Virus record (IMG/VR): IMGVR_UViG_3300025930_000007
Location: 1 to 64,000 of that record
Strand: one strand, 5' to 3'
Length of the DNA: 64,000 nt
The translations under genes were made by a program, and so were the position numbers. The notes beneath the pieces were generated by a model. It worked only from the letters and a program-made list of their open reading frames with translations, was not told the origin of the DNA and did no database searches. Positions 1-55,988 of the stretch are shown here, piece by piece; within the stretch, counting starts at the first letter, position 1, and each line of letters starts with the position of its first letter.

Positions 1-300
1 GGCTGCTGCCAGATGTTCTTCCTCCCCAACGGCACGCGCATCGTCGCGACGCTGTCGGGGATCCCGACGGGCGCGGGGGCGATCCGGATCAACACCGGCG
101 CCATCCTGGCGAACTACACGACGAAGGCGCGGCAGGGCTGCCTCTTCGGCGTCGGCGCCCTGGATGCCCAGCAGCAGGCCTATCCCGTGACGTACCCCTG
201 CCCGTCGACGTTCGGCGCGGCGCAGGCTCCCACCACGTCCCCGGCGGTCGCGCCGACGGGCGTGAGCTTCGGCCCGGCCTCGGGAGTCTCCGGGTCCTAA
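1..300 (+). CDS. 3' end of a hypothetical (probably structural) protein, open at the window edge
   Basis: Frame 1 is open from base 1 to TAA at 298-300 and is followed by a strong hairpin. Confidence 0.6.
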   Translation, partial: GCCQMFFLPNGTRIVATLSGIPTGAGAIRINTGAILANYTTKARQGCLFGVGALDAQQQAYPVTYPCPSTFGAAQAPTTSPAVAPTGVSFGPASGVSGS

Positions 301-325
301 GCTGATCCCAGCAATCCAGTCGATC

Positions 326-353
326 GGGGGAGGGCTCCTTCGGGAGCCCTCCC
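326..353 (+). terminator. Stable hairpin with C(UUCG)G loop, possible terminator or RNA stabiliser
   Basis: GGGGAGGGCTCC-TTCG-GGAGCCCTCCCC perfect stem; U-tract is weak. Confidence 0.5.
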
Positions 354-389
354 CACGGTCTTAACCCAAAAGCCGGACGGAGGCAGCCC

Positions 390-980
390 TTGGCCGAACT
401 TCCACAGTCCATTCTCTGCTACCCGATGTCCTTGGCGGACTACGCCAAGTACTGCTGCACGGGGCAGCTTCCGGCAAGCGTCAAGCACGCTCTTTCGCAG
501 GCGGCGCAGGATCCGGTTCTCAGGGCCATTCTCTGCGCGATGGAGATCGTCGGAGCGCTTGAACCTCTGTCCGCGACAAGACCAGGCGTTTGCGATCCGG
601 TGGTCTTCTTCACCCGGCAGATCACGCTGCCGGCCGCGACACTCAACCCGGACGGCTCGGTGACGCCGAGCGAAGCTCGAGTCATTTCGTTCTGCGCACC
701 GACCAACCGCGCGCTCGTGATTCAGAAGAGCCGGCTGAGCGCGGCCAACGACATCGCCGCCAATCAACCCGTTCCTCTCCCGATCTACAAGCGCGTCAAT
801 CTGGCGACGTTCGGAGAATGGTGCCTGCCCTTCGAGCCTGATAGCCTGCCGGGCGCCTTCGTGAATGTCGAGCACATCATCGTTCCTGCGGGCGCCGGAT
901 TCAGCATTTATACTCAGAACTGGAATCCCAACGGCGAAGCCGTCTTCTTCTACGAAGCTCGCTTCTGGGCTGCCTGCTGA
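390..980 (+). CDS. Hypothetical beta-rich protein, possible virion component
   Basis: 196-aa ORF, GGAGG upstream of TTG start. Confidence 0.6.
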   Translation: MAELPQSILCYPMSLADYAKYCCTGQLPASVKHALSQAAQDPVLRAILCAMEIVGALEPLSATRPGVCDPVVFFTRQITLPAATLNPDGSVTPSEARVISFCAPTNRALVIQKSRLSAANDIAANQPVPLPIYKRVNLATFGEWCLPFEPDSLPGAFVNVEHIIVPAGAGFSIYTQNWNPNGEAVFFYEARFWAAC

Positions 981-1000
981 TCCAGGCAATACTTTACTTC

Positions 1001-1104
1001 TTGCTACCGAGAGCTCCTTGAAGTAGACTTTGTAAGTCGAAGGTCTCCTCCCCCGGGATCTTCTTGATCCGTTAACGGATGTCCGCCCAAGGGAGAATCC
1101 CTTG
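1001..1104 (+). promoter_or_regulatory. Sigma70-type promoter plus conserved leader element, copy 1
   Basis: TTGCTA-17-TAGACT; hairpin GAAGGTCTC/CTCCCCC/GGGATCTTC; TCCGCCC at 1082-1088; SD and TTG start inside CCAAGGGA-GAA-TCCCTTGG hairpin. Confidence 0.8.
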
Positions 1105-3165
1105 GCCTCTCGCCTCCCAGACGGTTCCATTCAACTCTCCGATGGACGCATCGTCTACGCGAACTCCGTCATTTTGGGCGCTGATCTCTGCGAGATCGTG
1201 CCTCTGTGCGTTCCGCCGCCGGCGTGGCCCTTCGTTTCGGGTGGCGGCGGCGGTGGCGCGGGCCCGCAAGGCCCCGCGGGACCTGCAGGGTCGGGCGGCG
1301 GCGGTGCCGGCACGCAAGGCCAGCAGGGTTTCCAGGGAACAAATCCCGGACCTGCAGGACCGCAGGGTAATAACGGACCTCAGGGCTTCCAGGGCCTGGC
1401 AGGATCTGGAGCCCAGGGCCCTCAAGGTCTGCTTGGAAGCCAGGGAAATCAAGGGACTGCCGGAACCCAAGGCTTCCAGGGCCTGACCGGCGCCGGAGTT
1501 CAAGGCGCTCAGGGAAATCAGGGAACCGCGGGAACTCAGGGCTTCCAGGGCTTTCAAGGCGGCCTGAACCCCGACCTCTTCGCTTCGACCCGCATTGTCA
1601 GTTTGATCCCGGGAGAGGGGACAGATCTCACCATCTCTGCGGCTATCGCGGCATTGCCAGCCGCGGGCGGTGACATTTACGTCAAGCCCGGGACATATCC
1701 GATCGCAGCCTCGCTGGACTTCACCACCAAAGTGGTGAGGATCCGCGGCGCTGGGACCAGCATGAACTTCGCAACCGGACCTACGACACTGGTTCCTGCC
1801 GCAGGAATCTCGCTCTTCAAAAACGGCGCTGCGGGCTGCTCTATCGAGGACATGACCATTGAGGGAGACAACACCTCAGCCCAGGTCCTTTACGAGGGCA
1901 GCACCGATATCCGCTTCACCCGCATAGACTGCCACGATGTTGCGGGCATCATCAAGGGGACGCCTGAAGCCCTCTTCCGCGACTCCTTCGTGAACATCCC
2001 GAGCGGTCCTGCAGTCGGCGACCGGTTCTTCTGGCAGGGCGGCGCGGCCGGCGGGACGCTCATCTGGGACAATCTGGAAGTTTTCATCACCGGGTCGGGA
2101 GCGACCTTGATGAGCGGCGTCACGGCAGGCGCCAACGGTCCGACGTTCAAGGTCGTGAACTCCTACACCGGCGGCGGTGGCGGCGGCGGTGCGACGAACT
2201 TCTGGTTCGCCCAGGTCATCGACTGGGTCAACTTCGATTTCGACAATGGCCAGTTCGAGATCAGTGGCGCCCGGAACAACATCGTCAACTGCAACTTCCT
2301 GGACTGCTCGATCAAGTTCCTCGCCGTCTGGAACTTCGTCTCCAATTCCAACTTCTCCCAGGGCGGAACGAATGGCGGCGGCGGGATCTTCGATGCTCAG
2401 TTGTCCTTTGTCCAAAGCCTTGCCGGATTCCCGATCCAGAGCACCGTGACGGGGTGCAACTTCTACGGAAACGCTGTCTCCAACAAAGGTATCTCGATCA
2501 CGGGTCCCGCCGGTGCCTCGAGCGTTTCGGTGACGATCAGCGGCTGCAACTTCAGCAACCACACGCTGAACGACATCTACATCTCTGCCGGCCTGGACAT
2601 CATGATCACCGGATGCGTCTTCGACCACAGCACGGGAGCGAATGTCGACGCGATCGAGATCGTGGCTGGAGCGTCCTTCTCCGGCAGGGTCAATATCGTC
2701 GGGAATACCTTCGGAAGCGGCTATGCGCTTACCGTCAGTACCGCAGGGTTCAACGGCACCATCGCGAACAATATCAACCTTCTCACCGTATCCGACACAG
2801 GGAACGGCAACATCTGGACGGGCAATACAAATTTCGATCCCAGCGGAATCACCGGCAGCGCGGCATCAGACCTCATCAACGACACCAACGTCATCGGTCC
2901 AGTTGCGGCAGACACTCTTCTGAATCTTTTCTATCGGACTGTTACGGTAGACGCGAGCGGAGCTGCCCGGACCATCACGCTACCCACGGCCGCTTCCGCC
3001 AAGTGGCGGAAGTACATCATCAAGAAGGTCGATGCCTCGGCCAACACGGTTACCGTGGACGCGGACGGCGCCGAAACGATCGATGGCGCTCTGACATACG
3101 TTCTGATCGCGCAGTATCAGAGCGTCGAGATCCAGAGCGACGGTTCGACCTGGTGGATCATCTAG
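1102..3165 (+). CDS. Collagen-stalk fibre protein 1 with pectin-lyase-like beta-helix head
   Basis: Shared N-terminus MASRLPDGSIQ..PPPAWPF, G-X-Q repeats, 'AAIAALPAAGGDIYVKPGTY' tailspike-type motif, C-terminal 'TITLPTAA..KKVDASANTVTV..ETIDG' domain. Confidence 0.85.
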   Translation: MASRLPDGSIQLSDGRIVYANSVILGADLCEIVPLCVPPPAWPFVSGGGGGGAGPQGPAGPAGSGGGGAGTQGQQGFQGTNPGPAGPQGNNGPQGFQGLAGSGAQGPQGLLGSQGNQGTAGTQGFQGLTGAGVQGAQGNQGTAGTQGFQGFQGGLNPDLFASTRIVSLIPGEGTDLTISAAIAALPAAGGDIYVKPGTYPIAASLDFTTKVVRIRGAGTSMNFATGPTTLVPAAGISLFKNGAAGCSIEDMTIEGDNTSAQVLYEGSTDIRFTRIDCHDVAGIIKGTPEALFRDSFVNIPSGPAVGDRFFWQGGAAGGTLIWDNLEVFITGSGATLMSGVTAGANGPTFKVVNSYTGGGGGGGATNFWFAQVIDWVNFDFDNGQFEISGARNNIVNCNFLDCSIKFLAVWNFVSNSNFSQGGTNGGGGIFDAQLSFVQSLAGFPIQSTVTGCNFYGNAVSNKGISITGPAGASSVSVTISGCNFSNHTLNDIYISAGLDIMITGCVFDHSTGANVDAIEIVAGASFSGRVNIVGNTFGSGYALTVSTAGFNGTIANNINLLTVSDTGNGNIWTGNTNFDPSGITGSAASDLINDTNVIGPVAADTLLNLFYRTVTVDASGAARTITLPTAASAKWRKYIIKKVDASANTVTVDADGAETIDGALTYVLIAQYQSVEIQSDGSTWWII

Positions 3166-3175
3166 TGAGCGTGCG

Positions 3176-3955
3176 ATGAGTTTTCTTGAATCGAAGGTTA
3201 AAGGATCGATCGCGGTCGGCCGTGGGGATGGGGTAGGAATCCTTCCGGTTGGACCAGATGGCCAGGTCATTATAGCCGACAGCACTCAGCCTCTGGGAGT
3301 CAAGTACGGTAACAATGCCAGCGCCGTTGCAATGTCCATGGAGTCCCTCGCCCTCACGCAATACTTCTCAAATCTCGGGCTCAAGCCAAGCGTGCAGATC
3401 AAGTCCATGACGGAATCTCTGGACACGTTCGATGGCGTGTCCGGGGCCGGCGTGTTCAGCTATGACGGATCTCGCGCCAAGGAGACCGCCATCGCGTCGA
3501 CGTATGCCCGCTATGGTCTTGGTGCCGCGTACACGAAACTGTTGATGATCGTCGGAATGTTTCGCATGTCCACGGCAAACATGGGCATCTGGATCGCCGA
3601 CACGCTTGCGGCAAACGTACCGCAGGACGGAAATATATTCCTGAACGAGATGAACACCAATCGGACATCTCTTTATAAGCTTCCTGCTTTCTCGAACGTG
3701 ACATCGGATACGGATGTCAGCAGCACCCCGCAAACGTGGGCGCCGTACCCGATGATGGCAATTCACGTTGACCTGTCCCTGGCAACGCGCCGGATTCGCT
3801 GCTACTACCGTTGGAACGCCGAAATGTGGTGGCCTGTTCTCGACGTCGCGGACAATACGAAGATCGCCATTACGCAGATGCAGCACGCAGGCGTGCAGTT
3901 CAATTCGGGTCCAGGATTTGTCGGGTGCCCATTTGGAATTTGGGCTGACCTGTAA
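3176..3955 (+). CDS. Fibre-associated protein
   Basis: N-terminal 'KGSIAV..LPVGPDGQVIIADS' resembles a recurrent phage fibre repeat. Confidence 0.65.
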   Translation: MSFLESKVKGSIAVGRGDGVGILPVGPDGQVIIADSTQPLGVKYGNNASAVAMSMESLALTQYFSNLGLKPSVQIKSMTESLDTFDGVSGAGVFSYDGSRAKETAIASTYARYGLGAAYTKLLMIVGMFRMSTANMGIWIADTLAANVPQDGNIFLNEMNTNRTSLYKLPAFSNVTSDTDVSSTPQTWAPYPMMAIHVDLSLATRRIRCYYRWNAEMWWPVLDVADNTKIAITQMQHAGVQFNSGPGFVGCPFGIWADL

Positions 3956-4002
3956 GAAAATTCTGGTACCGGAACGACAAGATGAAGGCAGTGTTATCTC
4001 GC

Positions 4003-4111
4003 TTGCATTCCATCCGGTCATACACTAGAATTTCCTAGTCGGAGGTCTCCTCCCCCCCCTGAGGCCTCCCTGATTTCGAACTGTCGATCCGCCCCCGACC
4101 GGGGTTTCATG
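4003..4111 (+). promoter_or_regulatory. Promoter plus conserved leader element, copy 2
   Basis: TTGCAT-17-TAGAAT; hairpin GGAGGTCTC/C-rich loop/GAGGCCTCC; TCCGCCC at 4088-4094. Confidence 0.8.
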
Positions 4112-5077
4112 GCGATCAGGCTACCGGACGGCTCCATCCAGATGTCGGATGGGCGTATCATCTACGCCAATTCCATCATTCTCGCAAATGATCTGATCGA
4201 ACTCCTTCCGCTACTCATACCTCCGCCGGCGTGGCCTTTCGTCTCCGGCGGCGGTGGCGGCGGCCCAGGTCCTCAGGGGCCCGCGGGTCCCGCGGGCAGC
4301 GGCGGCGGGGGTGGCGGCGGGAGCCAGGGCACCCAAGGGTTCCAGGGAACAAATCCTGGAGTACAAGGACCTCAAGGGTTTTCCGGCGCGGCTGGAACGC
4401 AAGGCAGTCAGGGAAATCAAGGCTTCACTGGAACCGGCGCTCAAGGATTCCAAGGCCTCGGAGGTCCGCAGGGAAATCAAGGCCTCGTTGGATCTGGAGC
4501 ACAAGGAAACCAAGGCGATGAAGGGCCTCAGGGCAATCAAGGCCCTGGTGGTGCGGCCGGCGGTCCTCAAGGCAATCAAGGTCCTCAAGGCCCTCAAGGC
4601 ATCGCCGGGGTTCAGGGACCCCAGGGCTTCCAAGGATTCCAGGGCACCGGAGTCCAGGGACCACAGGGCATTCTTGGCACTCAGGGGAATCAGGGCTTCC
4701 AGGGAACCAGCGGAGCTGGCGCCGCAGCAATCTTCCAGAATGTCCAGGAAAACACACTTACCACGACGGATGCAACACCCACCGTCATTCTATCCGAGAC
4801 TATTGCGGCCGCGACAGTTGGAACTTTCCGAGTCGTGGTCGATGCTCGCTATGATGACGGATCTCTGCATGCAAGCTTCGTAAAGACAGTGAAGGTCGTG
4901 CGTGAAGGGGCCGGCGCGATTCTCGGAACGGAGAATTCCGACTATACCGACGATGAGAGCCTGGCGCTCACCGCAACGTTCACCGTTTCAGGGAACGACA
5001 TCCAAGTCACGGTGATCGGCGTCGCGGCGACCAGCATTACCTGGAAAGCGAGGATGGGTAGAGTCAATCTACCCTGA
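4109..5077 (+). CDS. Collagen-stalk fibre protein 2 with short beta-rich head
   Basis: Shared N-terminal anchor, long G-X-Q run, about 115-aa C-terminal domain. Confidence 0.85.
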   Translation: MAIRLPDGSIQMSDGRIIYANSIILANDLIELLPLLIPPPAWPFVSGGGGGGPGPQGPAGPAGSGGGGGGGSQGTQGFQGTNPGVQGPQGFSGAAGTQGSQGNQGFTGTGAQGFQGLGGPQGNQGLVGSGAQGNQGDEGPQGNQGPGGAAGGPQGNQGPQGPQGIAGVQGPQGFQGFQGTGVQGPQGILGTQGNQGFQGTSGAGAAAIFQNVQENTLTTTDATPTVILSETIAAATVGTFRVVVDARYDDGSLHASFVKTVKVVREGAGAILGTENSDYTDDESLALTATFTVSGNDIQVTVIGVAATSITWKARMGRVNLP

Positions 5078-5083
5078 TGAAAT

Positions 5084-5326
5084 ATGGCAGTAATCGCACA
5101 GATCACGATCGGGCACATCCGCATTCTGGATGTAAACGCAAACCCGAATGGATCCGTGTCCGCGCCTAAAGGTAGCCTTGCTTCCGATGAGGTTGCAGCA
5201 ATCCTTTACATCAACACCGACGGAGCAATGGCCTGGTCACAGGTTTCTGGGGCATCCTCTCTGGATCCTCGGGATGTCTTCCGCTTCAGCATGTTCCATA
5301 ACGTCGGCGTGACGGGAGGCGGCTAA
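5084..5326 (+). CDS. Small fibre-associated protein
   Basis: 'PNGSVSAPKGSLA..LYINTDG..W' motif; tightly coupled to neighbours. Confidence 0.6.
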   Translation: MAVIAQITIGHIRILDVNANPNGSVSAPKGSLASDEVAAILYINTDGAMAWSQVSGASSLDPRDVFRFSMFHNVGVTGGG

Positions 5327-5655
5327 TGCCTATAGTTGCTCTTAATCTTACTCCTGGCCTTCTAGGGACAGCAGAGACAAATCTGTTCGCCGCGATCCCG
5401 GTGGGCCATGAGTACGATCTACCCGTGATCCGTTTCGTGAACAATGACCCGTTGAACTCGCACCAGCTCAGAATCTGGAACAAAGTGGGTGCTGGCGCGG
5501 GGACGAACGCGGACATCGAGTCGATGCTGTCGATCCAGCCGCAGTCGACCTACGAACACGGGCCGCTCGCGCTTCCGGCCGGCCGCGTGATTTCGGTTGC
5601 TGCGGATGAGGCCGGATTCATTAGTTGCCGTCCTACGGGCTGGGATATCACGTAA
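5326..5655 (+). CDS. Small beta-rich structural protein
   Basis: TAATG overlap with the upstream gene, GGAGG SD. Confidence 0.65.
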   Translation: MPIVALNLTPGLLGTAETNLFAAIPVGHEYDLPVIRFVNNDPLNSHQLRIWNKVGAGAGTNADIESMLSIQPQSTYEHGPLALPAGRVISVAADEAGFISCRPTGWDIT

Positions 5656-5670
5656 GGAAGGGGAAATTAG

Positions 5671-5973
5671 ATGGGATTCAAACTTTATTCGGACCAGTTC
5701 TCGGATCTGCCGATGCTGGCCTGCGATGTCTGCGGGGAGAGAATCATCGACATCTGGAATGACCAGGCGACGGGATCTCCCGGACGCGACGGCCAGACGA
5801 CGGATGTCGTCATTCATCATGCAAGCCATGTGGTTACAGGCACGGTCACTATGGCCCTGGTCGATTTCATCCGTCTTTTCATCATCCAGAGTAGACCGGG
5901 CAACCTCGGCTCGGATGGCCAGCACGACCATGTGGACGTGCAATATCCGATGGGAGGGAGGTTCGAAGCATGA
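5671..5973 (+). CDS. Hypothetical protein with CxxC
   Basis: SD present; CDVC motif. Confidence 0.6.
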   Translation: MGFKLYSDQFSDLPMLACDVCGERIIDIWNDQATGSPGRDGQTTDVVIHHASHVVTGTVTMALVDFIRLFIIQSRPGNLGSDGQHDHVDVQYPMGGRFEA

Positions 5974-6086
5974 GCACGATGATCATCAGTCCAATCGTCA
6001 TCATCGATACTTCCTCGGCAAATCCTCAGATCGTCGAGCAGAGCGCTGGAACAGTCGGGGTGGCGATCTCCGTGATGGTGGTGTAG
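5970..6086 (+). CDS. Very small hypothetical protein (38 aa)
   Basis: ATGA overlap with upstream stop, GGGAGG SD, fills the gap exactly. Confidence 0.4.
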   Translation: MSTMIISPIVIIDTSSANPQIVEQSAGTVGVAISVMVV

Positions 6087-6087
6087 G

Positions 6088-6441: not shown

Positions 6442-6454
6442 GGAGGAATTGATC

Positions 6455-45576: not shown

Positions 45577-45577
45577 G

Positions 45578-48683: not shown

Positions 48684-48887
48684 ATGAACGTTCTCAGGAT
48701 GCCCGGAGCTCCTCGCATGGGTCAGGCGGCCGCTCCTGCTGCTCCTGCTGTTCCGTCCGCAGGGCCGATCGTCGCCGTGGGCCCCGCTGCCGTGGTGGGA
48801 CCAACCGACGGTTACCTCTGGCCGATCGTCATCGGCGCGCTAGTACTGGGCGGAGTCGCCCTGCTGATCAGCGCCTCTAAGAAGTAG
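48684..48887 (+). CDS. Minimal MGQ-leader membrane protein
   Basis: MNVLRMPGAPRMGQ + Ala/Pro linker + TM + KK. Confidence 0.75.
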   Translation: MNVLRMPGAPRMGQAAAPAAPAVPSAGPIVAVGPAAVVGPTDGYLWPIVIGALVLGGVALLISASKK

Positions 48888-48893
48888 GAGCTC

Positions 48894-50027: not shown

Positions 50028-50036
50028 GAGGAATTC

Positions 50037-50621
50037 ATGATCCCATTGCGGATGGCTTCGATCGGTGGTTTCAACGGTCCCCGCGGAACGATGTTCCACG
50101 GCAGCGCGACTGATTCTTTCAGCGTGGGTCGGATCTCCCTGGGCGAATCCGATCTGGGCGTGAACACGACCGGACTGGCTCGCTATGAGCTGGCGAAGAA
50201 GGAACTCGCTCAGTACGACAGTCTGGTCGAGCGGGTCAAGCGTATCGGCAACAAGGCTGCCCGCGAGCAGATCATCGATACCTACGGCCTGAGCGAGCCG
50301 GACAACAAGGACAAGTCGCTCTACGCGCGTAACGTGGTCGCGTCCGACCTCGCGAACGCGGAGAGCTACACGCCCATCAACTATGACATCTACACGGCTC
50401 CTGGACCCGCCAAGAACCGTCCTGGCAGGCTCCAGGATTGGAACTCGAGTTTCGCAAAAGACGTCAAGTACGCGGAAGACACGTACGGCATCCTGCCGGA
50501 ACCCCAGGTGATCGAGCGGACGACCACCGTCAGCCAGGTTCCGGCCTGGGTGATGCCGGTCACGATCGGTGCGCTCGCGGTGGCTGGTCTGGCTGCCTTG
50601 GGAGTCTTCAGCAAAAAGTAA
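50037..50621 (+). CDS. LGE-leader membrane protein, family A
   Basis: 'YELAKKELAQYDSLVER..ESYTPINY..TYGIL'. Confidence 0.8.
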   Translation: MIPLRMASIGGFNGPRGTMFHGSATDSFSVGRISLGESDLGVNTTGLARYELAKKELAQYDSLVERVKRIGNKAAREQIIDTYGLSEPDNKDKSLYARNVVASDLANAESYTPINYDIYTAPGPAKNRPGRLQDWNSSFAKDVKYAEDTYGILPEPQVIERTTTVSQVPAWVMPVTIGALAVAGLAALGVFSKK

Positions 50622-50649
50622 TGGCCTTATTTTTATAAAGGGGAGAAAG

Positions 50650-51021
50650 ATGATTGCCTTCCAGCCGGTTTACTCGCGTGGTCGGTACATGGGTCAGGCG
50701 GCTCCGGCCGCGGCTCCTGCTCCCGCTCCTGCTGCAGCTCCGGCTGCGCCGGCGGCGGCTCCTGTCGTGCCGATGGTGACCACCACGTCCTACACGGGCG
50801 TTCCGGGCTTCCTCGAGACCGTCGCCGTTCTGGGCGTTTCCGCGGCGGCCGCCTGGACCGGCGTCCGCGCGGGCATGAACAAGAGCACGCCGAAGCTTCA
50901 GCGGGCGGCTGGCTGGGTCGGCGGCGTGGGCGGTGCGCTGCTCGGGCTGCTCTATCTCGGCACCAAGACCGGCATCACGCGCTCGATCGCGCTGCCGCAG
51001 ATCCAGGTGAACCCCGCATGA
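50650..51021 (+). CDS. MGQ-leader two-TM protein
   Basis: GGGAG SD before ATG 50650; 'RGRYMGQ'; paralog of the next gene. Confidence 0.75.
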   Translation: MIAFQPVYSRGRYMGQAAPAAAPAPAPAAAPAAPAAAPVVPMVTTTSYTGVPGFLETVAVLGVSAAAAWTGVRAGMNKSTPKLQRAAGWVGGVGGALLGLLYLGTKTGITRSIALPQIQVNPA

Positions 51022-51410
51022 GACCCTTCACGCCGTACAATCGGACGATCGAGCCGGCCAGGATCGGATTGGGCCAGTTCTCTCCATTCATAAATCCGTT
51101 CGAAGTGACTGGAGATCAGACGCCCACGACGACCCCGTCGCCTTCCGTTCAGGCGGCAGGACCTGCATCCGCGATCAAGCCGATCGTGGTACTGACTGGG
51201 CTCATGCTGACGGGGCTATCGGCCGCCACGGCTTATGTCGGGATGTCCTACGGCATGGACAAGAGCAAGAAGGATCTCCAGCGTGCGATCGGCTGGACGG
51301 TCGGCGTAGCCGGTGTGCTGTCCGGCCTGGTCCGACTGGCCGGAACCACTGCCGCACTGCTCATTCCGGCGCCCACTTCAGCGCCCATGGTCATGGCAGG
51401 GAGACGCTAA
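51018..51410 (+). CDS. LGQ-leader two-TM protein
   Basis: 'RIGLGQ'; 'GMDKSKKDLQRAIGW' matches 'GMNKSTPKLQRAAGW'. Confidence 0.75.
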   Translation: MRPFTPYNRTIEPARIGLGQFSPFINPFEVTGDQTPTTTPSPSVQAAGPASAIKPIVVLTGLMLTGLSAATAYVGMSYGMDKSKKDLQRAIGWTVGVAGVLSGLVRLAGTTAALLIPAPTSAPMVMAGRR

Positions 51411-51413
51411 GAG

Positions 51414-51932
51414 ATGCGCTTCGACCTCGTCGCCTTCCTGGGAGGCCTGACTGTTGGAGCCGCGGCTGCGGCTCTATACGGTGCCACACGGAGCACGAAG
51501 CTCGGCTGGAGTGGCGGCGGTGCAGGCGGTGGTCCTGGCGGCGGCGGTAGCTTCGGAGGCAGTCCCAGCGGCTCGGGGGGCTCATCCTATGCCCCCGGTG
51601 GTACAGGAGTCTATTCTGGACCGCCTGGACCCTTCGGTGGAGGGTTCATGGGACCTAGCGTCCTGGAATCGACGCCTTCTGAGGGAGAAGGAGAGATCGG
51701 GCCGATCGTTTCCGTTCCTCCGATCATTCATGACGGAGATGGTAACGGAATATTCGGAGGCTCATTCTTTGGGGTCAACGTGGCCCCTTGGTTCTGGCCT
51801 CTGAACATCGTGCCCCGGAACGACGAGATCATCTGCAAGAAGATTCCAGGCGATCCTGAAGAGACGATGGTATGTAAACGCAGATATCCGGTTCGAGCGG
51901 TGGCTTGGGGGCCACCCGCCGGCTGGCTCTAG
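51414..51932 (+). CDS. N-terminal TM, Gly-rich protein
   Basis: N-terminal hydrophobic helix, 'TKLGW', Gly-rich linker. Confidence 0.7.
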   Translation: MRFDLVAFLGGLTVGAAAAALYGATRSTKLGWSGGGAGGGPGGGGSFGGSPSGSGGSSYAPGGTGVYSGPPGPFGGGFMGPSVLESTPSEGEGEIGPIVSVPPIIHDGDGNGIFGGSFFGVNVAPWFWPLNIVPRNDEIICKKIPGDPEETMVCKRRYPVRAVAWGPPAGWL

Positions 51933-51940
51933 GAGATCTT

Positions 51941-52288
51941 ATGAGAACTCTTTTTGATACATCTTGGGTTCGCGATGCCTGGTCTCCTAATCTGAGCCTC
52001 GGCCAGGCTGGAACAGGAAACGTCTTCGGCGACATTGCCAATGCCGCCGCTACGGGCACGGCAGCGTACTTCCAGGCCGAAAAGGCAAAGGAAGAAGCCG
52101 CCGCCAAAGAAGCGCAGGCGAAGGCTCAGGCCGCCACCGCGGCCGCGCAGGCTCAGGCAGCGGCGGCTGCCGCCTATGCTTCCGGTCAGAATACTATTCT
52201 TGGCATGTCGCCGGGCACGGCAGCGATTGTAGGGTTGCTCGGAGTGGGCGCCATCGTCGCCGTGGTTATGGCTACGAAGAAGAAATAG
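51941..52288 (+). CDS. LGQ-leader Ala-rich membrane protein
   Basis: AGGAG SD; 'NLSLGQ'; TM + KKK. Confidence 0.75.
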   Translation: MRTLFDTSWVRDAWSPNLSLGQAGTGNVFGDIANAAATGTAAYFQAEKAKEEAAAKEAQAKAQAATAAAQAQAAAAAAYASGQNTILGMSPGTAAIVGLLGVGAIVAVVMATKKK

Positions 52289-52297
52289 GAGACGATC

Positions 52298-52567
52298 ATG
52301 TACCAGTACTCCCGCGCTCCACAGCAGATCGCGCCCCGCAACGGCTACGCGCCGTCGAGCCTCGGTCAGCTCCAGATGAGCCCCACGACTCCAGTCGGTC
52401 GTGAGAACCTCATGAAGCTCACCACGGGCGTCGCTCTCGGCGGCGGCGCTGCGTACGCGCTCTACAACATGCCCGGCCAGTCCAAGAAGAACAAGACTGC
52501 CCTGGGCGTGCTGGCTGGCGGCCTGGCCGCGACGGCGATCCTGAGCCTCGTGGACGCGTTCATCTAA
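52298..52567 (+). CDS. LGQ-leader two-TM protein
   Basis: 'APSSLGQ'. Confidence 0.75.
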   Translation: MYQYSRAPQQIAPRNGYAPSSLGQLQMSPTTPVGRENLMKLTTGVALGGGAAYALYNMPGQSKKNKTALGVLAGGLAATAILSLVDAFI

Positions 52568-52596
52568 GAGCCCTACGAACTTGAGGGAAGCTGCCG

Positions 52597-53439
52597 ATGA
52601 TCGGCAGCTTCCCTAGTTCGATCCAGGTCGCGCAAACAGCGGAGATTCGGATGCTGCTTCACTCCGGACCACGGCTTCTGCCTCCGCTACCACTCCGTCC
52701 TAAGCTCAGCCGGCGCATGGGCCAGATGGTCGCTTTCGATCCCAAAGTAGACTTCAACCCGGATGTCAAGGTGCAGGTTCCCGTCAACGTGGAACTGGGC
52801 GGCCTTCCGCTTTCGGTTGGCCTATTCTTGGGTTCCGGCCTTTCCTTTCTGATTCGGCCTCAGCTTCAGGAAGGATTCGCCAAAACAGCGGCATTGGTTC
52901 TTGGGGCGGGCCTGGCGGTCGCAGGCATCACGAATCTGATCTTGCCGAAGGCTCAGGCCTCGGCACCCGCGCCCGCAGCACCGAGCTCGACCCCAACAAC
53001 AGCAGCTCCCTCGGCTCCTGGCGGCGGCGGCGCCGTCAGCGCGCCGGCTGGAGTTGCGGTTTCGGACCAGGGGATCTTTAACGGCATCAGTGGGCAGGTG
53101 ACTTATCCCGGAGAGGGTGAATCGGTCAATATCTGGCCGTTGGCTTCGACCTATCCGATACGGGTTCAGGTCTACAATCCATCTGCAGCCTCGGCGACCT
53201 TCTATCTGCAGATCGTCGCAAACGAATCCCCGTTGCCATTCGGCAACGCGGCCCGCACGACGTTCCCCCTGCAAGTCACCGTCGGACCTGGTCAGACGCG
53301 AGATATCGACATCAATATGCCGATCTCGACGTGGGCCTGGAACGTGAAGTACGTGGACGTCGCTCTATCCGTCTATAAGCAACGTATGGCTGGGGAGAAC
53401 CCAGTGCTGATGGCGCAACGCTATCTTGTCGTTTCATAG
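52597..53439 (+). CDS. MGQ-leader two-TM protein with C-terminal Ig-like beta domain
   Basis: 'LSRRMGQ'; 'IRVQVYNP..VTVGPGQTR'. Confidence 0.75.
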   Translation: MIGSFPSSIQVAQTAEIRMLLHSGPRLLPPLPLRPKLSRRMGQMVAFDPKVDFNPDVKVQVPVNVELGGLPLSVGLFLGSGLSFLIRPQLQEGFAKTAALVLGAGLAVAGITNLILPKAQASAPAPAAPSSTPTTAAPSAPGGGGAVSAPAGVAVSDQGIFNGISGQVTYPGEGESVNIWPLASTYPIRVQVYNPSAASATFYLQIVANESPLPFGNAARTTFPLQVTVGPGQTRDIDINMPISTWAWNVKYVDVALSVYKQRMAGENPVLMAQRYLVVS

Positions 53440-53453
53440 GAGAGATTACGGCG

Positions 53454-53879
53454 ATGACACTGACGAAACCTTCCGGCTGGGCCCCCTATAAGAAGGGGTT
53501 GGGCACTTCTCGCGTGTCCATGGGCGCCATGTCCAATGCCGAGACACAGATGCTCGGAGTCGCGGTGCTGTCGGCGATCTCCATCGCAGGCATCCATTCG
53601 GCGATCTGCCCGAGCTACTTCACGATGAAGACGTTCGCGTCGCAGCCTGAGGCCAAGGCTCGCTCGATGGAAGGTCTCTGGATCTCTCTGGGTGTGTCGG
53701 CCCTGACGTCGGCGTCCCTCTACTGGGTCTTCAAGAGCTGGATGCCCGTGATCTTCGCCGGCGCCACCTCGCTCCTGCTCTTCGGCATCGGCGTTGCGGC
53801 GACGAATTCTGAGCCGCCGAAGAACATCCCGCCGATCGAGAAGCAGAGCGTCGTGACCGAGTCAGCGGGCATTCCTTAG
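53454..53879 (+). CDS. MGA-leader three-TM protein
   Basis: 'RVSMGA'; three hydrophobic helices. Confidence 0.75.
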   Translation: MTLTKPSGWAPYKKGLGTSRVSMGAMSNAETQMLGVAVLSAISIAGIHSAICPSYFTMKTFASQPEAKARSMEGLWISLGVSALTSASLYWVFKSWMPVIFAGATSLLLFGIGVAATNSEPPKNIPPIEKQSVVTESAGIP

Positions 53880-53905
53880 ACGGCCAATGTATAATCAGAG
53901 GCGCG

Positions 53906-54715
53906 ATGAATGCATGGCTCGGTCCGGTGGCTCTCAGCCTAGCTGATCGGAGACCATCACTAGGCGGCTTCCGTCGGCCGATCCAGGGCATTTATCGGCC
54001 TTCGGCTGCACGGTCGCATCTGGGTGCCACACAGTCTTTCCCACAGATCACGGCTACTCCGGAGGCACCCAATACCATCACCGGCTTCTCTCCAGAGAGC
54101 GCCAAAGATGGCGTAGTGATTGGGATCGGAGGAATCGGGTTGGCTCTGGTTTCCAGGTTCATTCCTGGAGTCGGCGAACCTGTTGCCCTGGTCGGCGGCG
54201 TCGGAATGATCGGTCTGGGTCTCTACAAGATCTACGAAGCAGTCACCGGTCGAGGAACTCCTACGGTTCAGAGCTTCATCACGCCTCCGGATCAGCAGGT
54301 TAGCGACATCTCCTTCATTACCGGCAAGATCCTTGAGCCGTCCGATAAGGGCCAGGCAGATGTAGGAGCCGGGTGGCAGGCGGTCTTTGAAGGCAAACGT
54401 ACCTTCAAGATCAAGTTCATGGTGACGAATACCGGTCCGAAGCCGATGACCGTCCTTGTCGAATTCCGGACGGAGCAGACTTCCAGGCCGTGGGTGGGAG
54501 ATCCCGAGGTATCCAACTTCTCGACCAGCTACGTCCTTGAACTTTCGCCTGGAGAAAGTAAGGTCATCCCAGGCTACCAGCCGGCCAAGGTTCTGGAATC
54601 CATGCTGCAGATCCAGTCCTATAGAAGCCAGGACATTACGGCGACTCTGCTCGCTCGGACTTCTTCGAGCGACACGGGAAAGAAGCTCGACCAGATCAGT
54701 TTTACAGCTTGGTAA
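53906..54715 (+). CDS. LGA-leader two-TM protein with Ig-like domain (paralog of 52597)
   Basis: 'RSHLGA'; 'IKFMVTNTG..LELSPGESK'; TATAAT upstream. Confidence 0.75.
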   Translation: MNAWLGPVALSLADRRPSLGGFRRPIQGIYRPSAARSHLGATQSFPQITATPEAPNTITGFSPESAKDGVVIGIGGIGLALVSRFIPGVGEPVALVGGVGMIGLGLYKIYEAVTGRGTPTVQSFITPPDQQVSDISFITGKILEPSDKGQADVGAGWQAVFEGKRTFKIKFMVTNTGPKPMTVLVEFRTEQTSRPWVGDPEVSNFSTSYVLELSPGESKVIPGYQPAKVLESMLQIQSYRSQDITATLLARTSSSDTGKKLDQISFTAW

Positions 54716-55669
54716 GTGATGAACGAATGGCTTGGTCCTGTTTCTTTGAGGCTCGTTGATCGTGGTCCTCTCTTTGGGGGCTTCGGATCTCGTATCCAGG
54801 ACATCCGCCAGCCACAGCCTTTTCTCGGCCAGGCAAGATTGAAGCAGTCCTATGAACTTGGACGGCCGGTCGCGCATCTGGATCAACCTCCGGACTGCTG
54901 CAATAGTCCGGATGGAACCAAATGCTTCGATCACTCGACCGGCGAATGCATCAATACCTGGAACAGCACTGTGGCAACTCCAAATGCTCCTGATTGCGTT
55001 CAGGACACTCGTGGAGAATTGGTTCATCCCTATTGCTATACCCCTCCTGTAGCTCCCACTCGCATGGAAGGAAGAGTTCGTAGAGTTCCTTTCTTCTCTC
55101 TGGGGGCTTGGGTCAACGATAAACCGGCGAAGTGCTGCAATAGGACTCATCCGGATGGAACGGCCTATCTGGAATGCTGCGAACCACTATGGAATGGTCC
55201 GGGATCAGATCCGAGCTTCCCGAGCTGCGACTCTCCGGATAATCCCTGCCCCTCCACGGGAGCCGCCCCGACTCCGACCCCGACCCCGACTCCGACTCCG
55301 ACTCCGACCCCGACTCCGACTCCGACCCCGACTCCGACTCCGACCCCCACCCCAACGCCAACACCGACACCTACACCAAGCCCGACCCCGACGTCTACAA
55401 CTGGTCCAATTCCAACGGATAATACGACCTCGGCTGGCAATGAACCGATACCGGCTACCGGAGGCGGCTCTTTTGTTCCCGTGCTTCCGCCTCGGCAGAG
55501 CATGACGACGGCATCTCCTCCGACCGGAGCCTTCCCTGGTCAACCATTTGCCGCCATGCGCCCTCCTCAGAAGCCTGTTCCGATCGCCAAGGCTCCTGCT
55601 CCACTTCCGCCGCCATGTCCGCTTGGACCGGTCCCTCTTCGTAAGTGGATCGAAGGCTGCATGGGGTAA
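54716..55669 (+). CDS. LGQ-leader Cys-rich protein with a (PT)n stalk
   Basis: Two CCN-containing Cys-rich modules; about 20 PT repeats. Confidence 0.75.
   Translation: MMNEWLGPVSLRLVDRGPLFGGFGSRIQDIRQPQPFLGQARLKQSYELGRPVAHLDQPPDCCNSPDGTKCFDHSTGECINTWNSTVATPNAPDCVQDTRGELVHPYCYTPPVAPTRMEGRVRRVPFFSLGAWVNDKPAKCCNRTHPDGTAYLECCEPLWNGPGSDPSFPSCDSPDNPCPSTGAAPTPTPTPTPTPTPTPTPTPTPTPTPTPTPTPTPTPTPSPTPTSTTGPIPTDNTTSAGNEPIPATGGGSFVPVLPPRQSMTTASPPTGAFPGQPFAAMRPPQKPVPIAKAPAPLPPPCPLGPVPLRKWIEGCMG
55268..55393 (+). repeat. Hexamer tandem repeat (CCGACY)n encoding Pro-Thr
   Basis: Directly visible; degenerate toward the 3' end. Confidence 0.85.
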
Positions 55670-55676
55670 TCGCTTC

Positions 55677-55988
55677 TTGATCTGTTCGAAGTGCCAAGCT
55701 CCCAATCCTCCAGTTCACATGGCCATCAAGGTCGGGAACGCCTACCTCGAGCTGAATTTCTGCGAAGGTTGCGCACCCAATCCCGACATCAAGGTTGAAC
55801 AGATCGCGACGAACATGATTTGCTGCCCGCGCTGCGGCACCCAGGCGAAGGACATCAATACTCGTGGCTTCGGCTGCGCAGACGATTACGAAATCTTTGC
55901 GACTGCGATCGCCAATTGGATTCAGCAATACCATGGGGCCTCCAGGCACGTCGGGAAGAATCCGGCGAAAAAATTATTTTGCGCTTGA
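55677..55988 (+). CDS. McsA-like zinc-finger protein lacking the C-terminal UVR domain
   Basis: CSKC..VH..ELNFCEGCA..CPRCG..GCADDYEIF..HG..HVGKNP follows the McsA layout; TTG start inferred. Confidence 0.7.
   Translation: MICSKCQAPNPPVHMAIKVGNAYLELNFCEGCAPNPDIKVEQIATNMICCPRCGTQAKDINTRGFGCADDYEIFATAIANWIQQYHGASRHVGKNPAKKLFCA

What the first reader, a model, noticed from the sequence alone, without database searches (positions are those of the whole stretch)
1..55988. Overall identity: possibly a large membrane-containing, tailless bacterial virus
Seen: 55 kb of co-oriented, largely structural-looking genes with dozens of TM proteins and capsid-fibre-like collagens. There is no recognisable terminase, portal, sheath, tube or tape measure, and the region is joined to a jumbo-phage-like tRNA/tmRNA island. 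Inference: an undescribed lineage of large internal-membrane or enveloped prokaryotic virus. Only part of the genome is visible.
Basis: inference. Interest (0 to 1): 0.7.

Follow-up and report, generated by a model that had tools for sequence, protein, structure and literature searches.

The report
Huge soil virus-like genome, no tail genes
The window is the conserved "particle-building" block of a complete 349-kb circular genome from an abundant, uncultivated soil element that looks like a huge phage but has no detectable terminase, portal, capsid or tail gene of tailed phages, so it may be a new kind of large bacterial virus, though its particle type is unproven.

Summary
Window 1-55,988 carries 70 genes, all on the + strand. 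Of these, 34 have predicted membrane helices (49% against 13% elsewhere). There are six collagen-like fibre genes, no recognisable head, tail or packaging gene, and a tmRNA plus tRNA island follows.

The contig is a fragment. A second IMG/VR record overlaps both of its ends, giving a circular map of 349,408 bp and 507 genes. No scan of this genome found a terminase, portal, HK97 capsid, sheath or other tail gene, and none found an NCLDV-type capsid, VirB4 or endolysin. The scans were Pfam and PHROGs on every ORF of 200 aa or more outside the window and 75 aa or more inside it, six-frame family searches, and a custom unfiltered TerL profile.

A HerA-type ATPase is present, but its family co-occurs with true terminases in ordinary phages, so it is not diagnostic.

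The best-conserved genes of the lineage are two adjacent small jelly-roll proteins at the window start. They lie in a syntenic module with a transglutaminase-like protease, a coiled-coil protein and membrane proteins. Structural matches are generic (Z about 7).

The tailless, membrane-containing reading is therefore plausible (about 0.35-0.4) but unproven. The rivals are a very divergent tailed phage or a non-viral giant element.

The parts
13..300 (+). Last 95 codons of a 240-aa jelly-roll protein ('j240'). The gene starts 423 nt before the window (L019:15514-16236). It is the best-conserved protein of the lineage.
   Evidence: 93 homologue clusters at 50-99% identity. It is 79% identical on a 216-kb contig where the HerA ATPase is only 43% identical. 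AF2 model pLDDT 70, beta-sandwich. Best matches have Z about 7: phage KP1 baseplate cup, SPV1 capsid protein, STIV A223, HHIV-2 capsid protein. Many metagenome contigs break inside it. A metatranscriptome holds an exact 443-nt contig on window 1-311 only.
390..980 (+). 196-aa protein ('j196'): three N-terminal helices plus an eight-stranded jelly roll, with six invariant cysteines.
   Evidence: 70 homologue clusters at 45-91% identity, including contigs of 352,816, 216,145 and 191,412 bp. AF2 pLDDT 84, pTM 0.78. Best Z 6-7.2 to GOLD domains, Ena spore-appendage subunits, HHIV-2 capsid protein and STIV A223.
1102..17709 (+). Fibre cassette. Five collagen-like paralogues share one 45-aa N-terminal domain: 1102-3165, 4109-5077, 8111-10156, 12303-14645, 16519-17709. 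Interleaved are small genes, a 563-aa relative without collagen (10380-12071), and a 272/275-aa paralogue pair (14863-16518).
   Evidence: All-against-all BLASTP cluster; G-X-Y runs; Pfam Collagen. The cassette varies in content between relatives while its flanks are syntenic.
18567..22383 (+). 783-aa collagen protein with 53 G-X-Y triplets, followed by two fibre-family relatives (20928-22052, 22054-22383).
   Evidence: Pfam Collagen E = 9e-38; same BLASTP cluster.
26470..30105 (+). 1211-aa protein with several family-2 glycosyltransferase domains.
   Evidence: Pfam Glycos_transf_2 E = 5e-70 in 5 stretches. tblastn hits to actinophage glycosyltransferases. 58% identical in relatives.
32428..54715 (+). 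Membrane-protein block: 37 genes, 26 with predicted TM helices, 16 of them C-terminally anchored. Many carry an N-terminal R-x-x-[LM]-G-[QA] motif. One of the non-TM proteins is a 574-aa proline-rich, collagen/BclA-like protein (41927-43651).
   Evidence: Atlas lead for 41927-43651. Several members are conserved in a 353-kb relative (L198).
40254..41417 (+). 387-aa protein whose N-terminus carries the long form of the motif (RRGPSLGAEMLIELGQ).
56589..56948 (+). tmRNA gene
   Evidence: Rfam RF00023, 116 bits, E = 1.5e-44. ARAGORN did not call it.
56950..62416 (+). First part of the tRNA island, which runs on to about 84 kb of the genome.

Best explanation
SHOWN. The window is about four fifths of a 66-kb, 79-gene, single-strand block in a complete genome. 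That genome maps as a 349,408-bp circle and belongs to an uncultivated element that is abundant in rhizosphere and soil. Relatives occur on contigs of 190-353 kb. The genome has the accessory repertoire of a 'huge phage': about 45 tRNAs, a tmRNA, a release factor, Ro60, RNA ligases, Thg1, many HNH endonucleases and DNA methylases, RNR and an integrase. It has no detectable hallmark gene of tailed phages.

INFERRED (my best reading, about 0.4). The block builds a particle that is not a head-tail virion. The two adjacent, extremely conserved small jelly-roll proteins (240 and 196 aa) would form or organise the shell. The upstream 794-aa coiled-coil protein and the transglutaminase-fold cysteine protease would act in assembly and maturation. 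The roughly 26 tail-anchored membrane proteins would populate a viral lipid layer. The collagen-like fibres share one N-terminal anchor domain but have different distal domains, and would be interchangeable glycosylated host-recognition spikes, modified by the large glycosyltransferase set. The conserved N-terminal motif R-x-x-[LM]-G-[QA] (long form LGAEELIELG) is proposed to be a targeting or cleavage signal that marks proteins for incorporation.

How the DNA would be packaged is unknown.
For: Complete genome. G001 1-153,090 equals G000 113,401-266,490 at 99.999% identity. G001's last 82 bp equal G000's first 82 bp. An independent 119-kb ENA contig spans that junction.

No tailed-phage hallmark. 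Six-frame searches found none for PF03237, PF03354, PF05065, PF20441 and PF04984. PF04860 gave only 13 bits, and PF17289 gave 13.7 bits inside the SNF2 helicase. PHROG or Pfam scans of all ORFs of 200 aa or more, and of window ORFs of 75 aa or more, gave no head, tail or packaging family. An unfiltered HMM built from 10 soil-phage TerLs, run against 3,203 six-frame ORFs, had a best E of 0.06. No unexplained large ORF has a terminase-like P-loop.

Conserved module. In nine relatives whose fetched stretch spans it (j240 55-94% identical), the order is helicase(-) | 794-aa HTH/coiled coil | transglutaminase-like j266 | (j210) | two TM proteins | j240 | j196. Fibres, glycosyltransferase and TM proteins follow where the stretch reaches that far.

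j240 is the most conserved gene, and assemblies break inside it as they do at genes shared between strains. Both j240 and j196 fold as jelly rolls. Hits include capsid proteins of the membrane-containing viruses SPV1, HHIV-2, HCIV-1, STIV, PRD1 and FLiP. j266 has a transglutaminase fold (TM 0.57/0.79) with Cys/His/Asp in place.

TM enrichment has p = 8e-11 and motif enrichment p = 2e-9. The motif is encoded by CTG/CTC codons, so it is not a start-codon artefact. It is conserved in homologues at 33-73% identity.

The element is found in at least 19 soil or rhizosphere samples, and it is contig number 1 of its assembly.
Against: All structural matches are below Z 8, which the tool itself calls a common arrangement. 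For both proteins the best AlphaFold DB cluster is named 'Phage tail protein'. For j240 the best ESM Atlas clusters are unnamed proteins labelled Uroviricota. The top PDB match of j240 is a phage baseplate protein.

No double-jelly-roll protein was found, and no packaging ATPase lies in or near the module. The HerA-type ATPase belongs to a family present in phages that have TerL (10 of 30). No lysis enzyme was found.

Only 2 of 507 proteins were folded with an alignment, so a very divergent HK97 capsid protein, portal or terminase could have been missed. PHROG scans of 200-330-aa proteins were read only as the 25 best families, so weak hits could be hidden.

The j240 + j196 complex prediction gave no answer. 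There is no evidence that the DNA is ever encapsidated: all holders are bulk metagenomes. No prokaryotic virus outside Caudoviricetes is known above roughly 30-40 kb (my own knowledge), so the prior is low.
Confidence: 0.4

Rival explanations
1. A tailed jumbo phage (Caudoviricetes) whose terminase, portal, capsid and tail genes have diverged beyond profile-HMM recognition. The window would be its tail-fibre, baseplate and host-interaction region. j240 and j196 would be baseplate or decoration proteins to which the fibres attach.
For: Fibres with a shared N-terminal anchor are typical of baseplate-attached tail fibres. The best AlphaFold DB cluster for both jelly rolls is 'Phage tail protein', the best PDB hit of j240 is a baseplate cup protein, and the ESM Atlas neighbours are labelled Uroviricota. 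Transglutaminase-like proteins of this size cluster with Uroviricota. IMG/VR accepted both fragments as viral. All known prokaryotic viruses above 100 kb are tailed (own knowledge).
Against: Not one of the 30-60 structural genes expected in a jumbo phage is recognised in a complete genome, not even TerL, which is the most conserved of them (and all PHROG scans). There is no terminase-like P-loop ORF. The genome has very few large proteins: 12 above 600 aa, and none that looks like a tape measure, sheath or portal. A baseplate or decoration protein is not normally the most conserved gene of a phage lineage.
Confidence: 0.22
2. Not a virus. It would be a giant extrachromosomal or integrative element of a soil bacterium (a bacterial counterpart of Borg-like elements or a megaplasmid). 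The window would then encode a cell-surface structure: disulfide-linked jelly-roll fibres, collagen-like glycoproteins and membrane proteins, cross-linked by a transglutaminase, rather than a virion.
For: No capsid, packaging or lysis gene of any known virus type was found. An integrase and a RepB-type primase are present. j196 matches Ena spore-appendage subunits over its whole length, including the Cys-rich N-terminus (Z 5.2-6.6). Collagen-like BclA-type proteins plus a transglutaminase recall spore-surface assembly (own knowledge). Only bulk metagenomes hold the sequence. Borgs show that huge elements with glycan clusters and structure-only 'capsid-like' proteins can remain unclassifiable (PMC12660748).
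Against: No VirB4 was found, and no partition or conjugation family appeared in any scan. The content is otherwise phage-like: many HNH endonucleases, RNA repair and tRNA-repair genes, a tRNA array with a tmRNA, short densely packed ORFans in long co-oriented blocks, and Mom-like and other DNA modification genes. Coverage is high enough for the element to be the largest contig of a soil assembly.
Confidence: 0.25
3. The 349-kb circle is an assembly artefact that joins two or more unrelated elements, so the absence of hallmark genes means nothing.
For: The circle was inferred from contigs of different samples. One join rests on an 82-bp overlap inside a gene where many assemblies break.
Against: Over 153 kb the two records agree at 99.999% identity. 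The 82-bp join is bridged by an independent 119-kb ENA contig and by several relatives with the same gene order. A relative gives a single contig of 352,816 bp. GC content is 57.7% in both records.
Confidence: 0.04

Closest known systems
Huge / jumbo phages of Caudoviricetes (e.g. the clades of Al-Shayeb et al. 2020, PMC7162821)
   Same: Genome above 200 kb; large tRNA array, tmRNA and release factor; RNA-repair and nucleotide-metabolism genes; many HNH endonucleases and methylases; mostly ORFans in long co-oriented blocks; known only from metagenomes.
   Different: No terminase, portal, HK97 capsid protein, prohead protease, sheath, tube, baseplate or tape measure was detectable in a complete genome. 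No DNA or RNA polymerase of the usual jumbo-phage kinds is present (only PolX, a primase-polymerase-like protein and an exonuclease subunit). Very few large proteins.
Membrane-containing icosahedral viruses with two small vertical jelly-roll capsid proteins: Sphaerolipoviridae (HHIV-2, HCIV-1, P23-77) and Portogloboviridae (SPV1)
   Same: Two adjacent genes for small jelly-roll proteins of about 170-290 aa (own knowledge for the reference viruses), next to small membrane proteins. SPV1, HHIV-2 and HCIV-1 capsid proteins are among the best structural matches (Z 6-7.2). SPV1 also has no recognised packaging ATPase (own knowledge).
   Different: Those genomes are 16-31 kb and this one is 349 kb. 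The matches are no better than generic jelly-roll similarity. No A32/FtsK-type ATPase lies beside the pair. The two proteins show no mutual homology. No evidence of capsomer formation.
PRD1-like Tectiviridae and other double-jelly-roll viruses (Bamfordvirae)
   Same: An internal-membrane virion model with many small membrane proteins. The PRD1 spike P5 has an N-terminal anchor, a collagen-like stretch and a jelly-roll knob (own knowledge). The second jelly roll of PRD1 P3 is among the weak hits (Z 5.2).
   Different: No double-jelly-roll protein was detected (PF04451 none, no PHROG hit). No small A32-like ATPase. No protein-primed polymerase. Genome more than 20 times larger.
Borg extrachromosomal elements of Methanoperedens (PMC12660748)
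   Same: Huge elements of unresolved status, with multicopy glycoconjugate clusters. Putative capsid-like proteins are visible only through structure prediction. The translation-related gene repertoire is similar.
   Different: Borgs are archaeal, linear with inverted terminal repeats, up to about 1 Mb and AT-rich. This element is bacterial in style (SD sites, bacterial tmRNA), maps as a circle and has 58% GC.
Bacillus spore-surface system (Ena appendages, BclA collagen-like glycoprotein, Tgl transglutaminase)
   Same: A Cys-rich jelly-roll subunit resembling Ena (Z 5-6.6), collagen-like proteins with BclA-like features and a transglutaminase-fold enzyme, all in one block.
   Different: No sequence homology. 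The carrier is a phage-like mobile genome, probably of a non-sporulating soil phylum. The similarity is at fold level only.

Membership tests
Caudoviricetes (tailed phages) | Large terminase subunit (ATPase + nuclease) | tested here: not met
   PF03237, PF03354 and PF20441 found none in six frames of G000+G001. PF17289 gave 13.7 bits inside the SNF2 helicase. No PHROG hit on any ORF of 330 aa or more. A custom TerL HMM with --max had a best E of 0.06. Profile methods only, so a structure-level relative is not excluded.
Caudoviricetes (tailed phages) | HK97-fold major capsid protein | tested here: not met
   PF05065 found none. No PHROG 'head and packaging' family apart from collagen-repeat artefacts and the HerA ATPase. 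Not tested by structure for most ORFs.
Caudoviricetes (tailed phages) | Portal protein | tested here: inconclusive
   PF04860 gives one 13-bit match (E = 0.005, cut-off 39 bits) in a 185-aa ORF at G000 119,016-119,228. This is probably chance. No PHROG portal hit.
Caudoviricetes (tailed phages) | Tail (tube, sheath, tape measure, baseplate) | tested here: not met
   PF04984 found none. No PHROG 'tail' family except matches to G-X-Y repeats. The fold-level resemblance of j240 and j196 to a 'Phage tail protein' cluster and to a baseplate cup protein is weak.
Double-jelly-roll viruses (Bamfordvirae, e.g. Tectiviridae) | Double-jelly-roll major capsid protein | tested here: not met
   PF04451 found none. 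The two folded candidates are single jelly rolls. Other ORFs were not folded.
Double-jelly-roll viruses (Bamfordvirae, e.g. Tectiviridae) | FtsK/HerA-type (A32-like) packaging ATPase in the morphogenesis module | tested here: inconclusive
   A 603-aa DUF87/HerA ATPase with a coiled coil and two winged-helix domains exists (L033:9059-10867, Pfam E = 1.3e-11). It lies 45 kb from the module on the other strand. Its family occurs in phages that have TerL and in prophages of many phyla.
Two-jelly-roll-capsid viruses (Helvetiavirae / Portogloboviridae type) | Two adjacent genes for vertical single-jelly-roll capsid proteins that form capsomers | tested here: inconclusive
   Adjacent 240-aa and 196-aa jelly rolls are present and are the most conserved genes. 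Similarity to SPV1 and HHIV-2 capsid proteins is Z 6-7.2, which is generic. Complex prediction gave no answer.
Membrane-containing virion | Lipid layer in the particle | not testable with these tools
   Only indirect evidence: 26 of 37 genes at 32-55 kb encode TM proteins in the same operon-like block.
Conjugative plasmid / ICE | Type IV secretion ATPase (VirB4), relaxase, coupling protein | tested here: not met
   PF03135 found none. No such family appeared in any Pfam or PHROG scan. Relaxase and coupling-protein families were not searched separately.
Cellular chromosome fragment | rRNA, ribosomal proteins, core metabolism | tested here: not met
   Rfam finds only tRNAs and the tmRNA over about 330 kb. 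The last 20 kb of G001 was not scanned with Rfam. The genome closes as a 349-kb circle.

The most novel reading that the evidence does not exclude
This lineage (genomes of about 190-353 kb, abundant in soils, perhaps infecting Acidobacteriota) is the first giant non-tailed virus of bacteria. Its particle would be built from small jelly-roll proteins around a protein-rich lipid membrane. It would be decorated with exchangeable glycosylated collagen-like spikes, and assembled using a shared N-terminal targeting/cleavage motif and a transglutaminase-fold protease. Such a virus would lie outside every established realm-level morphogenesis module.
Probability: 0.3. Interest if true: 0.95.

Novelty: categorically new. 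Interest (0 to 1): 0.8.

Why it matters
Every prokaryotic virus known above roughly 100 kb is a tailed phage, and genome gigantism in bacterial viruses is explained within that one architecture. Here is a complete 349-kb, phage-like genome that is among the most abundant assembled entities in several rhizosphere metagenomes, and it has no detectable head, tail or packaging gene.

If it makes a jelly-roll, membrane-containing particle, it would be a bacterial counterpart of the giant viruses of eukaryotes and would add a new branch to virus taxonomy. If it makes no particle, it would be a new class of giant bacterial mobile element.

Either way the question is directly testable. The two conserved jelly-roll proteins are concrete handles for metaproteomics, antibodies, recombinant assembly tests and marker-gene surveys.

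The case also shows that CheckV-type completeness values (92% and 90% for two fragments that are really 76% and 68% of the genome) can mislead for such lineages.

Tried and rejected
1. Nearest cultured phages. Megablast of 25 kb found nothing. tblastn of the glycosyltransferase and of a helicase found only 25-30% identical hits.

2. The HerA/DUF87 ATPase as a packaging enzyme. Rejected as diagnostic, because 10 of 30 IMG/VR phages carrying a homologue also have Terminase_6N. It travels as a two-gene module with a DUF5131 protein.

3. The 574-aa protein (41927-43651) as capsid candidate. The ESM model is poor (pLDDT 0.46) and the features are collagen/BclA-like.

4. The 112-128-kb region as a hidden head-tail module. 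The gene sizes resemble portal, capsid and sheath, and there is a 13-bit portal hit. However, the 381-aa protein looks like an ADP-ribosyltransferase (lead only), the 588-aa protein belongs to a five-member paralogue family, and none has a PHROG structural hit.

5. The R-x-x-LGQ motif as an artefact of calling starts too far upstream, with the SD site and start codon read in frame. Rejected: the Leu codons are mostly CTG or CTC, and no SD-like sequence lies upstream.

6. j240 and j196 as paralogues. hhalign found no similarity.

7. j240 + j196 complex prediction. No answer.

8. Relatives of j240 in IMG/VR. Only the genome itself was found.

9. PDB sequence searches with j240, j196, j266 and the 563-aa fibre relative. 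Nothing.

10. Literature searches for a described lineage of this kind. None found.

11. Host. Only a weak lead: the closest cellular-MAG homologues of the ATPase are mostly in Acidobacteriota. One j240 homologue is filed under a Planctomycetota MAG.

Full report
WHAT THE WINDOW IS PART OF

The window is bases 1-64,000 of an IMG/VR record of 266,490 bp (57.7% GC, 'linear', CheckV 92%). In the JGI metagenome collection it is contig Ga0207701_10000001. That record is a fragment.

An exact-protein look-up showed other assemblies running past the window's left end. One of them is IMGVR_UViG_3300005544_000020 (236,090 bp, handle G001). G001 1-153,090 equals G000 113,401-266,490 at 99.999% identity. 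G001 then continues for 83 kb, and its last 82 bp equal the first 82 bp of the window. A 119-kb ENA contig and several relatives bridge that 82-bp join with the same gene order.

The genome therefore maps as a circle of 349,408 bp. My hexamer-trained gene call finds 507 genes at 81% coding density. A relative gives a single contig of 352,816 bp. Shine-Dalgarno-like motifs precede 61% of starts against 27% of random sites, peaking 8-12 nt upstream, so the genes are translated the bacterial way.

CHECKING THE OBSERVATION

In 1-55,988 there are 70 genes, all on the + strand. The block actually starts 9.2 kb before the window and holds 79 genes. Thirty-four of the 70 have predicted TM helices, against 56 of 437 elsewhere (p = 8e-11). 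In 32-55 kb, 26 of 37 do, and 16 of those are C-terminally anchored.

Five collagen-like proteins share a near-identical 45-residue N-terminus but differ distally. A sixth has 53 G-X-Y triplets. Three non-collagen proteins belong to the same BLASTP cluster.

Ten large window proteins were scanned one by one against Pfam and PHROGs, and 52 more against PHROGs as a set. The only 'tail' hits were to the collagen repeats. The rest was glycosyltransferase, methyltransferase or unnamed families.

The tmRNA (56,589-56,948, 116 bits) and the tRNA island are real. The island runs to about 84 kb. ARAGORN finds 42 tRNAs from 57.4 to 84 kb, and two more lie elsewhere in the genome.

Six-frame family searches of both records found no Terminase_6N, TerL_ATPase, TerL_nuclease, HK97 Phage_capsid or sheath. 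The same searches rang in control genomes. Phage_portal gave one 13-bit match in a 185-aa ORF. Terminase_6C gave 13.7 bits inside the SNF2 helicase.

Every ORF of 330 aa or more outside the window was scanned individually against PHROGs or Pfam. Every ORF of 200-330 aa was scanned in two sets, of which only the 25 strongest families are shown. No head, tail or packaging family appeared.

I then built a profile from ten terminases of soil phages and ran it without filters against all 3,203 stop-to-stop ORFs. The best E-value was 0.06. A search for P-loops found no unexplained large ORF with a terminase-like Walker A.

No rRNA or other cellular RNA was found. So neither canonical head-tail genes nor cellular core genes are present, within the reach of profile methods.

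Capsid_NCLDV found none, and there is no PHROG hit to a double-jelly-roll capsid protein.

One FtsK/HerA-type ATPase exists (603 aa, L033:9059-10867, DUF87 E = 1.3e-11). It has Walker A SGGGKS and Walker B VVMVDEAH, followed by a coiled coil and two winged-helix repeats.

It is not diagnostic. Homologues at 35-55% identity sit in hundreds of 30-80-kb phages and prophages of many phyla, and 10 of 30 of those tested carry a Terminase_6N gene elsewhere in the genome. It usually travels with a DUF5131 gene. In this genome it lies among replication and nucleotide-metabolism genes, 45 kb from the block and on the other strand.

WHAT THE REST OF THE GENOME ENCODES

- RNA and translation: Ro60/TROVE, three RNA ligases, tRNA-His guanylyltransferase, a release factor.
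- Nucleotide metabolism: class II ribonucleotide reductase, thymidylate synthase, a nicotinate phosphoribosyltransferase-like protein.
- DNA replication, repair and recombination: ATP-dependent DNA ligase, PolX, a RepB-type primase, UvrD-, DinG- and SNF2-type helicases, a tyrosine integrase.
- DNA modification and homing: several DNA methylases, a Mom-like protein, many HNH endonucleases.
- Glycan synthesis: three nucleotide-sugar epimerases, many glycosyl- and methyltransferases.
- Others: DnaJ, a VWA protein.

This is the accessory repertoire described for huge phages (PMC7162821). No VirB4, Amidase_2 or phage lysozyme was found.

THE CONSERVED CORE AT THE WINDOW'S LEFT EDGE

The 196-aa protein at 390-980 has 70 homologue clusters at 45-91% identity, some on contigs of 191-353 kb. 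The gene cut by the window start (240 aa, L019:15514-16236) has 93 clusters at 50-99% identity. It is 79-83% identical on contigs where the ATPase is only about 43% identical. It is thus the most conserved gene found. About half of the 54 metagenome contigs that hit it start or end inside it. This is what assemblers do at sequences shared between co-occurring strains.

In nine relatives whose fetched stretch spans the module, down to 55% j240 identity, the gene order is fixed:
- DinG-like helicase on the other strand
- a 145-aa protein
- a 794-aa protein with an N-terminal HTH and a long coiled coil
- a 266-aa protein (j266), with a degenerate 210-aa paralogue in the closer relatives
- two membrane proteins
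- j240, then j196

Where the stretch reaches further, a variable fibre cassette, the large glycosyltransferase and the membrane proteins follow.

j266 has the Cys/His/Asp signature of transglutaminase-fold cysteine proteases. Its ESM model matches Transglut_core clusters at TM 0.57/0.79.

FOLDS OF THE TWO CORE PROTEINS

With alignments of 40 and 42 homologues, AlphaFold2 gives j196 as three helices plus an eight-stranded jelly roll (pLDDT 84, pTM 0.78). It gives j240 as a beta-sandwich (pLDDT 70, pTM 0.63).

Foldseek and VIA-align rank many single-jelly-roll capsid proteins among the best matches. For j240 these include SPV1 (E = 1.2e-3, Z 7.2, the whole chain aligned), STIV A223, HHIV-2, HCIV-1, FLiP, and the EhV and PBCV capsid proteins. 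For j196 they include HHIV-2, STIV A223 and PRD1 P3.

Equally good matches are a Klebsiella phage baseplate cup protein, phage cement proteins, GOLD domains, nucleoplasmin and Ena spore-appendage subunits. All are below Z 8, which the tool describes as compatible with a merely common arrangement.

The top AlphaFold DB cluster for both is named 'Phage tail protein'. The nearest ESM Atlas clusters for j240 are unnamed and labelled Uroviricota (TM 0.5). The two proteins are not detectably homologous to each other. The complex prediction returned no answer.

A rhizosphere metatranscriptome holds an exact 443-nt contig on the 3' end of j240 and nothing else exact in the first 6 kb. This is a weak hint of high expression, because DNA carry-over is not excluded.

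A SHARED N-TERMINAL MOTIF

Many proteins of the block carry R-x-x-[LM]-G-[QA] within their first 60 residues. [LM]GQ occurs in 14 of 31 proteins at 35-55 kb against 25 of 476 elsewhere (p = 2e-9). The Leu is encoded mostly by CTG or CTC and no SD-like sequence lies upstream, so this is not a mis-called start.

A longer form, LGAE[EM]LIE[LM]G, occurs in three settings:
- At the N-terminus of the conserved membrane protein j235. It is kept in homologues of 33-73% identity and is duplicated in one of them.
- At the N-terminus of the protein at 40254-41417.
- On both sides of the PolX domain of the protein at L011:1694-2836.

Two other proteins repeat a related motif at both ends. A short motif that is conserved, N-terminal or domain-flanking, and shared by dozens of otherwise unrelated proteins is what one sees for capsid-targeting and maturation-cleavage signals in large phages and in giant viruses (own knowledge). 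I propose that role, with j266 as the candidate protease. None of this is shown.

WEIGHING THE READINGS

A very divergent tailed phage (0.22) fits the size, the accessory genes and the prior. It requires that not one of dozens of structural genes, TerL included, is recognisable in a complete genome. It also requires that a baseplate-like protein be the most conserved gene.

A non-viral giant element encoding a cell-surface structure (0.25) fits the absence of any capsid, packaging or lysis gene, and it fits the Ena/BclA/transglutaminase resemblance. It fits poorly with the phage-like remainder and the lack of transfer or partition genes.

A non-tailed particle built from jelly-roll proteins, a membrane and glycosylated spikes (0.4) fits several things. 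These are the conserved module, the extreme conservation of j240, the operon-like block of tail-anchored membrane proteins, the shared anchor domain of the fibres and the motif. It has no confident fold assignment, no packaging machine, no evidence of encapsidation, and a low prior.

An assembly chimera is unlikely (0.04).

WHAT I COULD NOT DO

Only two proteins could be folded with alignments, so a structure-level HK97 capsid protein, portal or terminase is not excluded. For the 200-330-aa proteins, weak PHROG hits may be hidden behind the 25-family display limit. TM prediction was a simple hydropathy scan. The host is unknown. The ATPase's closest homologues in cellular MAGs are mostly from Acidobacteriota, whose GC content is similar. 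One j240 homologue is filed under a Planctomycetota MAG.

Noticed in passing
window 35,000-55,000 (e.g. 39270-39542, 44095-44730, 51018-51410); also L004, L005, L010 and others: A protein-level motif, R-x-x-[LM]-G-[QA], lies within the first 60 residues of dozens of otherwise unrelated proteins, most of them tail-anchored membrane proteins. It is enriched 15-fold in 35-55 kb (p = 2e-9). It is not a start-codon artefact and is conserved in relatives. It may be a targeting or cleavage signal.
   Followed up: partly
L011:1694-2836 (-) = genome 241,691-242,836: A PolX-type polymerase domain is flanked on both sides by the long motif MGAEMLIE[ML]G, as if it were excised from, or targeted as part of, a polyprotein. 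The same motif opens the proteins at window 40254-41417 and at L019:13823-14530.
   Followed up: partly
L004:10949-12103 (+) and L010:7667-8779 (-): Two proline-rich proteins carry related motifs at both ends. One has FPVVNLSPRLGQ at the N-terminus and RRSFPVVNL at the C-terminus. The other has RGPTLGQ at the N-terminus, GRRLGQ internally and GRRYRVINSQ at the C-terminus.
   Followed up: no
window 1-300 and L200-L253: About half of the 54 metagenome contigs that hit j240 start or end inside the gene, at many different codons. The window's own contig and its partner G001 do the same. This probably reflects assembly-graph tangles at the most conserved gene shared by co-occurring relatives. It means that genomes of this lineage are systematically split there.
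   Followed up: partly
whole records G000 and G001: CheckV completeness is given as 92% and 90% for two overlapping fragments that are really 76% and 68% of a 349,408-bp genome. Both are classed 'linear', although together they close a circle.
   Followed up: yes
L033:9059-10867 (-) and its downstream neighbour (genome 301,423-302,217): The HerA/DUF87 ATPase with two C-terminal winged-helix domains is paired with a DUF5131 protein in 21 of the fetched phage and prophage loci. Some homologues of the ATPase carry inteins (Hint_2, LAGLIDADG_3). This is a widespread two-gene phage module of unknown role.
   Followed up: partly
L001:5257-6978 (+) = genome 65,257-66,981: A Ro60/TROVE + vWA protein sits in the middle of the tRNA island. 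Rfam found no Y RNA at gathering threshold nearby. Together with three RNA ligases, Thg1 and two small P-loop kinases, it suggests an extensive RNA-repair set.
   Followed up: no
L019:12397-13197 and L019:13194-13826 (just upstream of the window): A transglutaminase-fold protein with an intact Cys/His/Asp triad is followed by a paralogue in which the Cys and His are replaced. The pair is conserved in the closer relatives.
   Followed up: partly
window 51,634-51,725: ARAGORN reports a 'tRNA-???' with a four-base anticodon inside the ORF at 51414-51932. Rfam does not confirm it, so it is probably a false positive.
   Followed up: partly
window 31,290-31,727: A 145-aa protein whose sequence looks like a CheY-type receiver domain (MDKKKRVLVVEDDNGIRL...). 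It stands alone, between the glycosyltransferase and the membrane-protein block. Read from the sequence only.
   Followed up: no
genome-wide: An unusually large glycan toolkit: at least three nucleotide-sugar epimerases, a rhamnosyl O-methyltransferase fusion, and GT1, GT2 and GT4 enzymes. This parallels the fibril-glycosylation sets of giant eukaryotic viruses and of Borgs.
   Followed up: no
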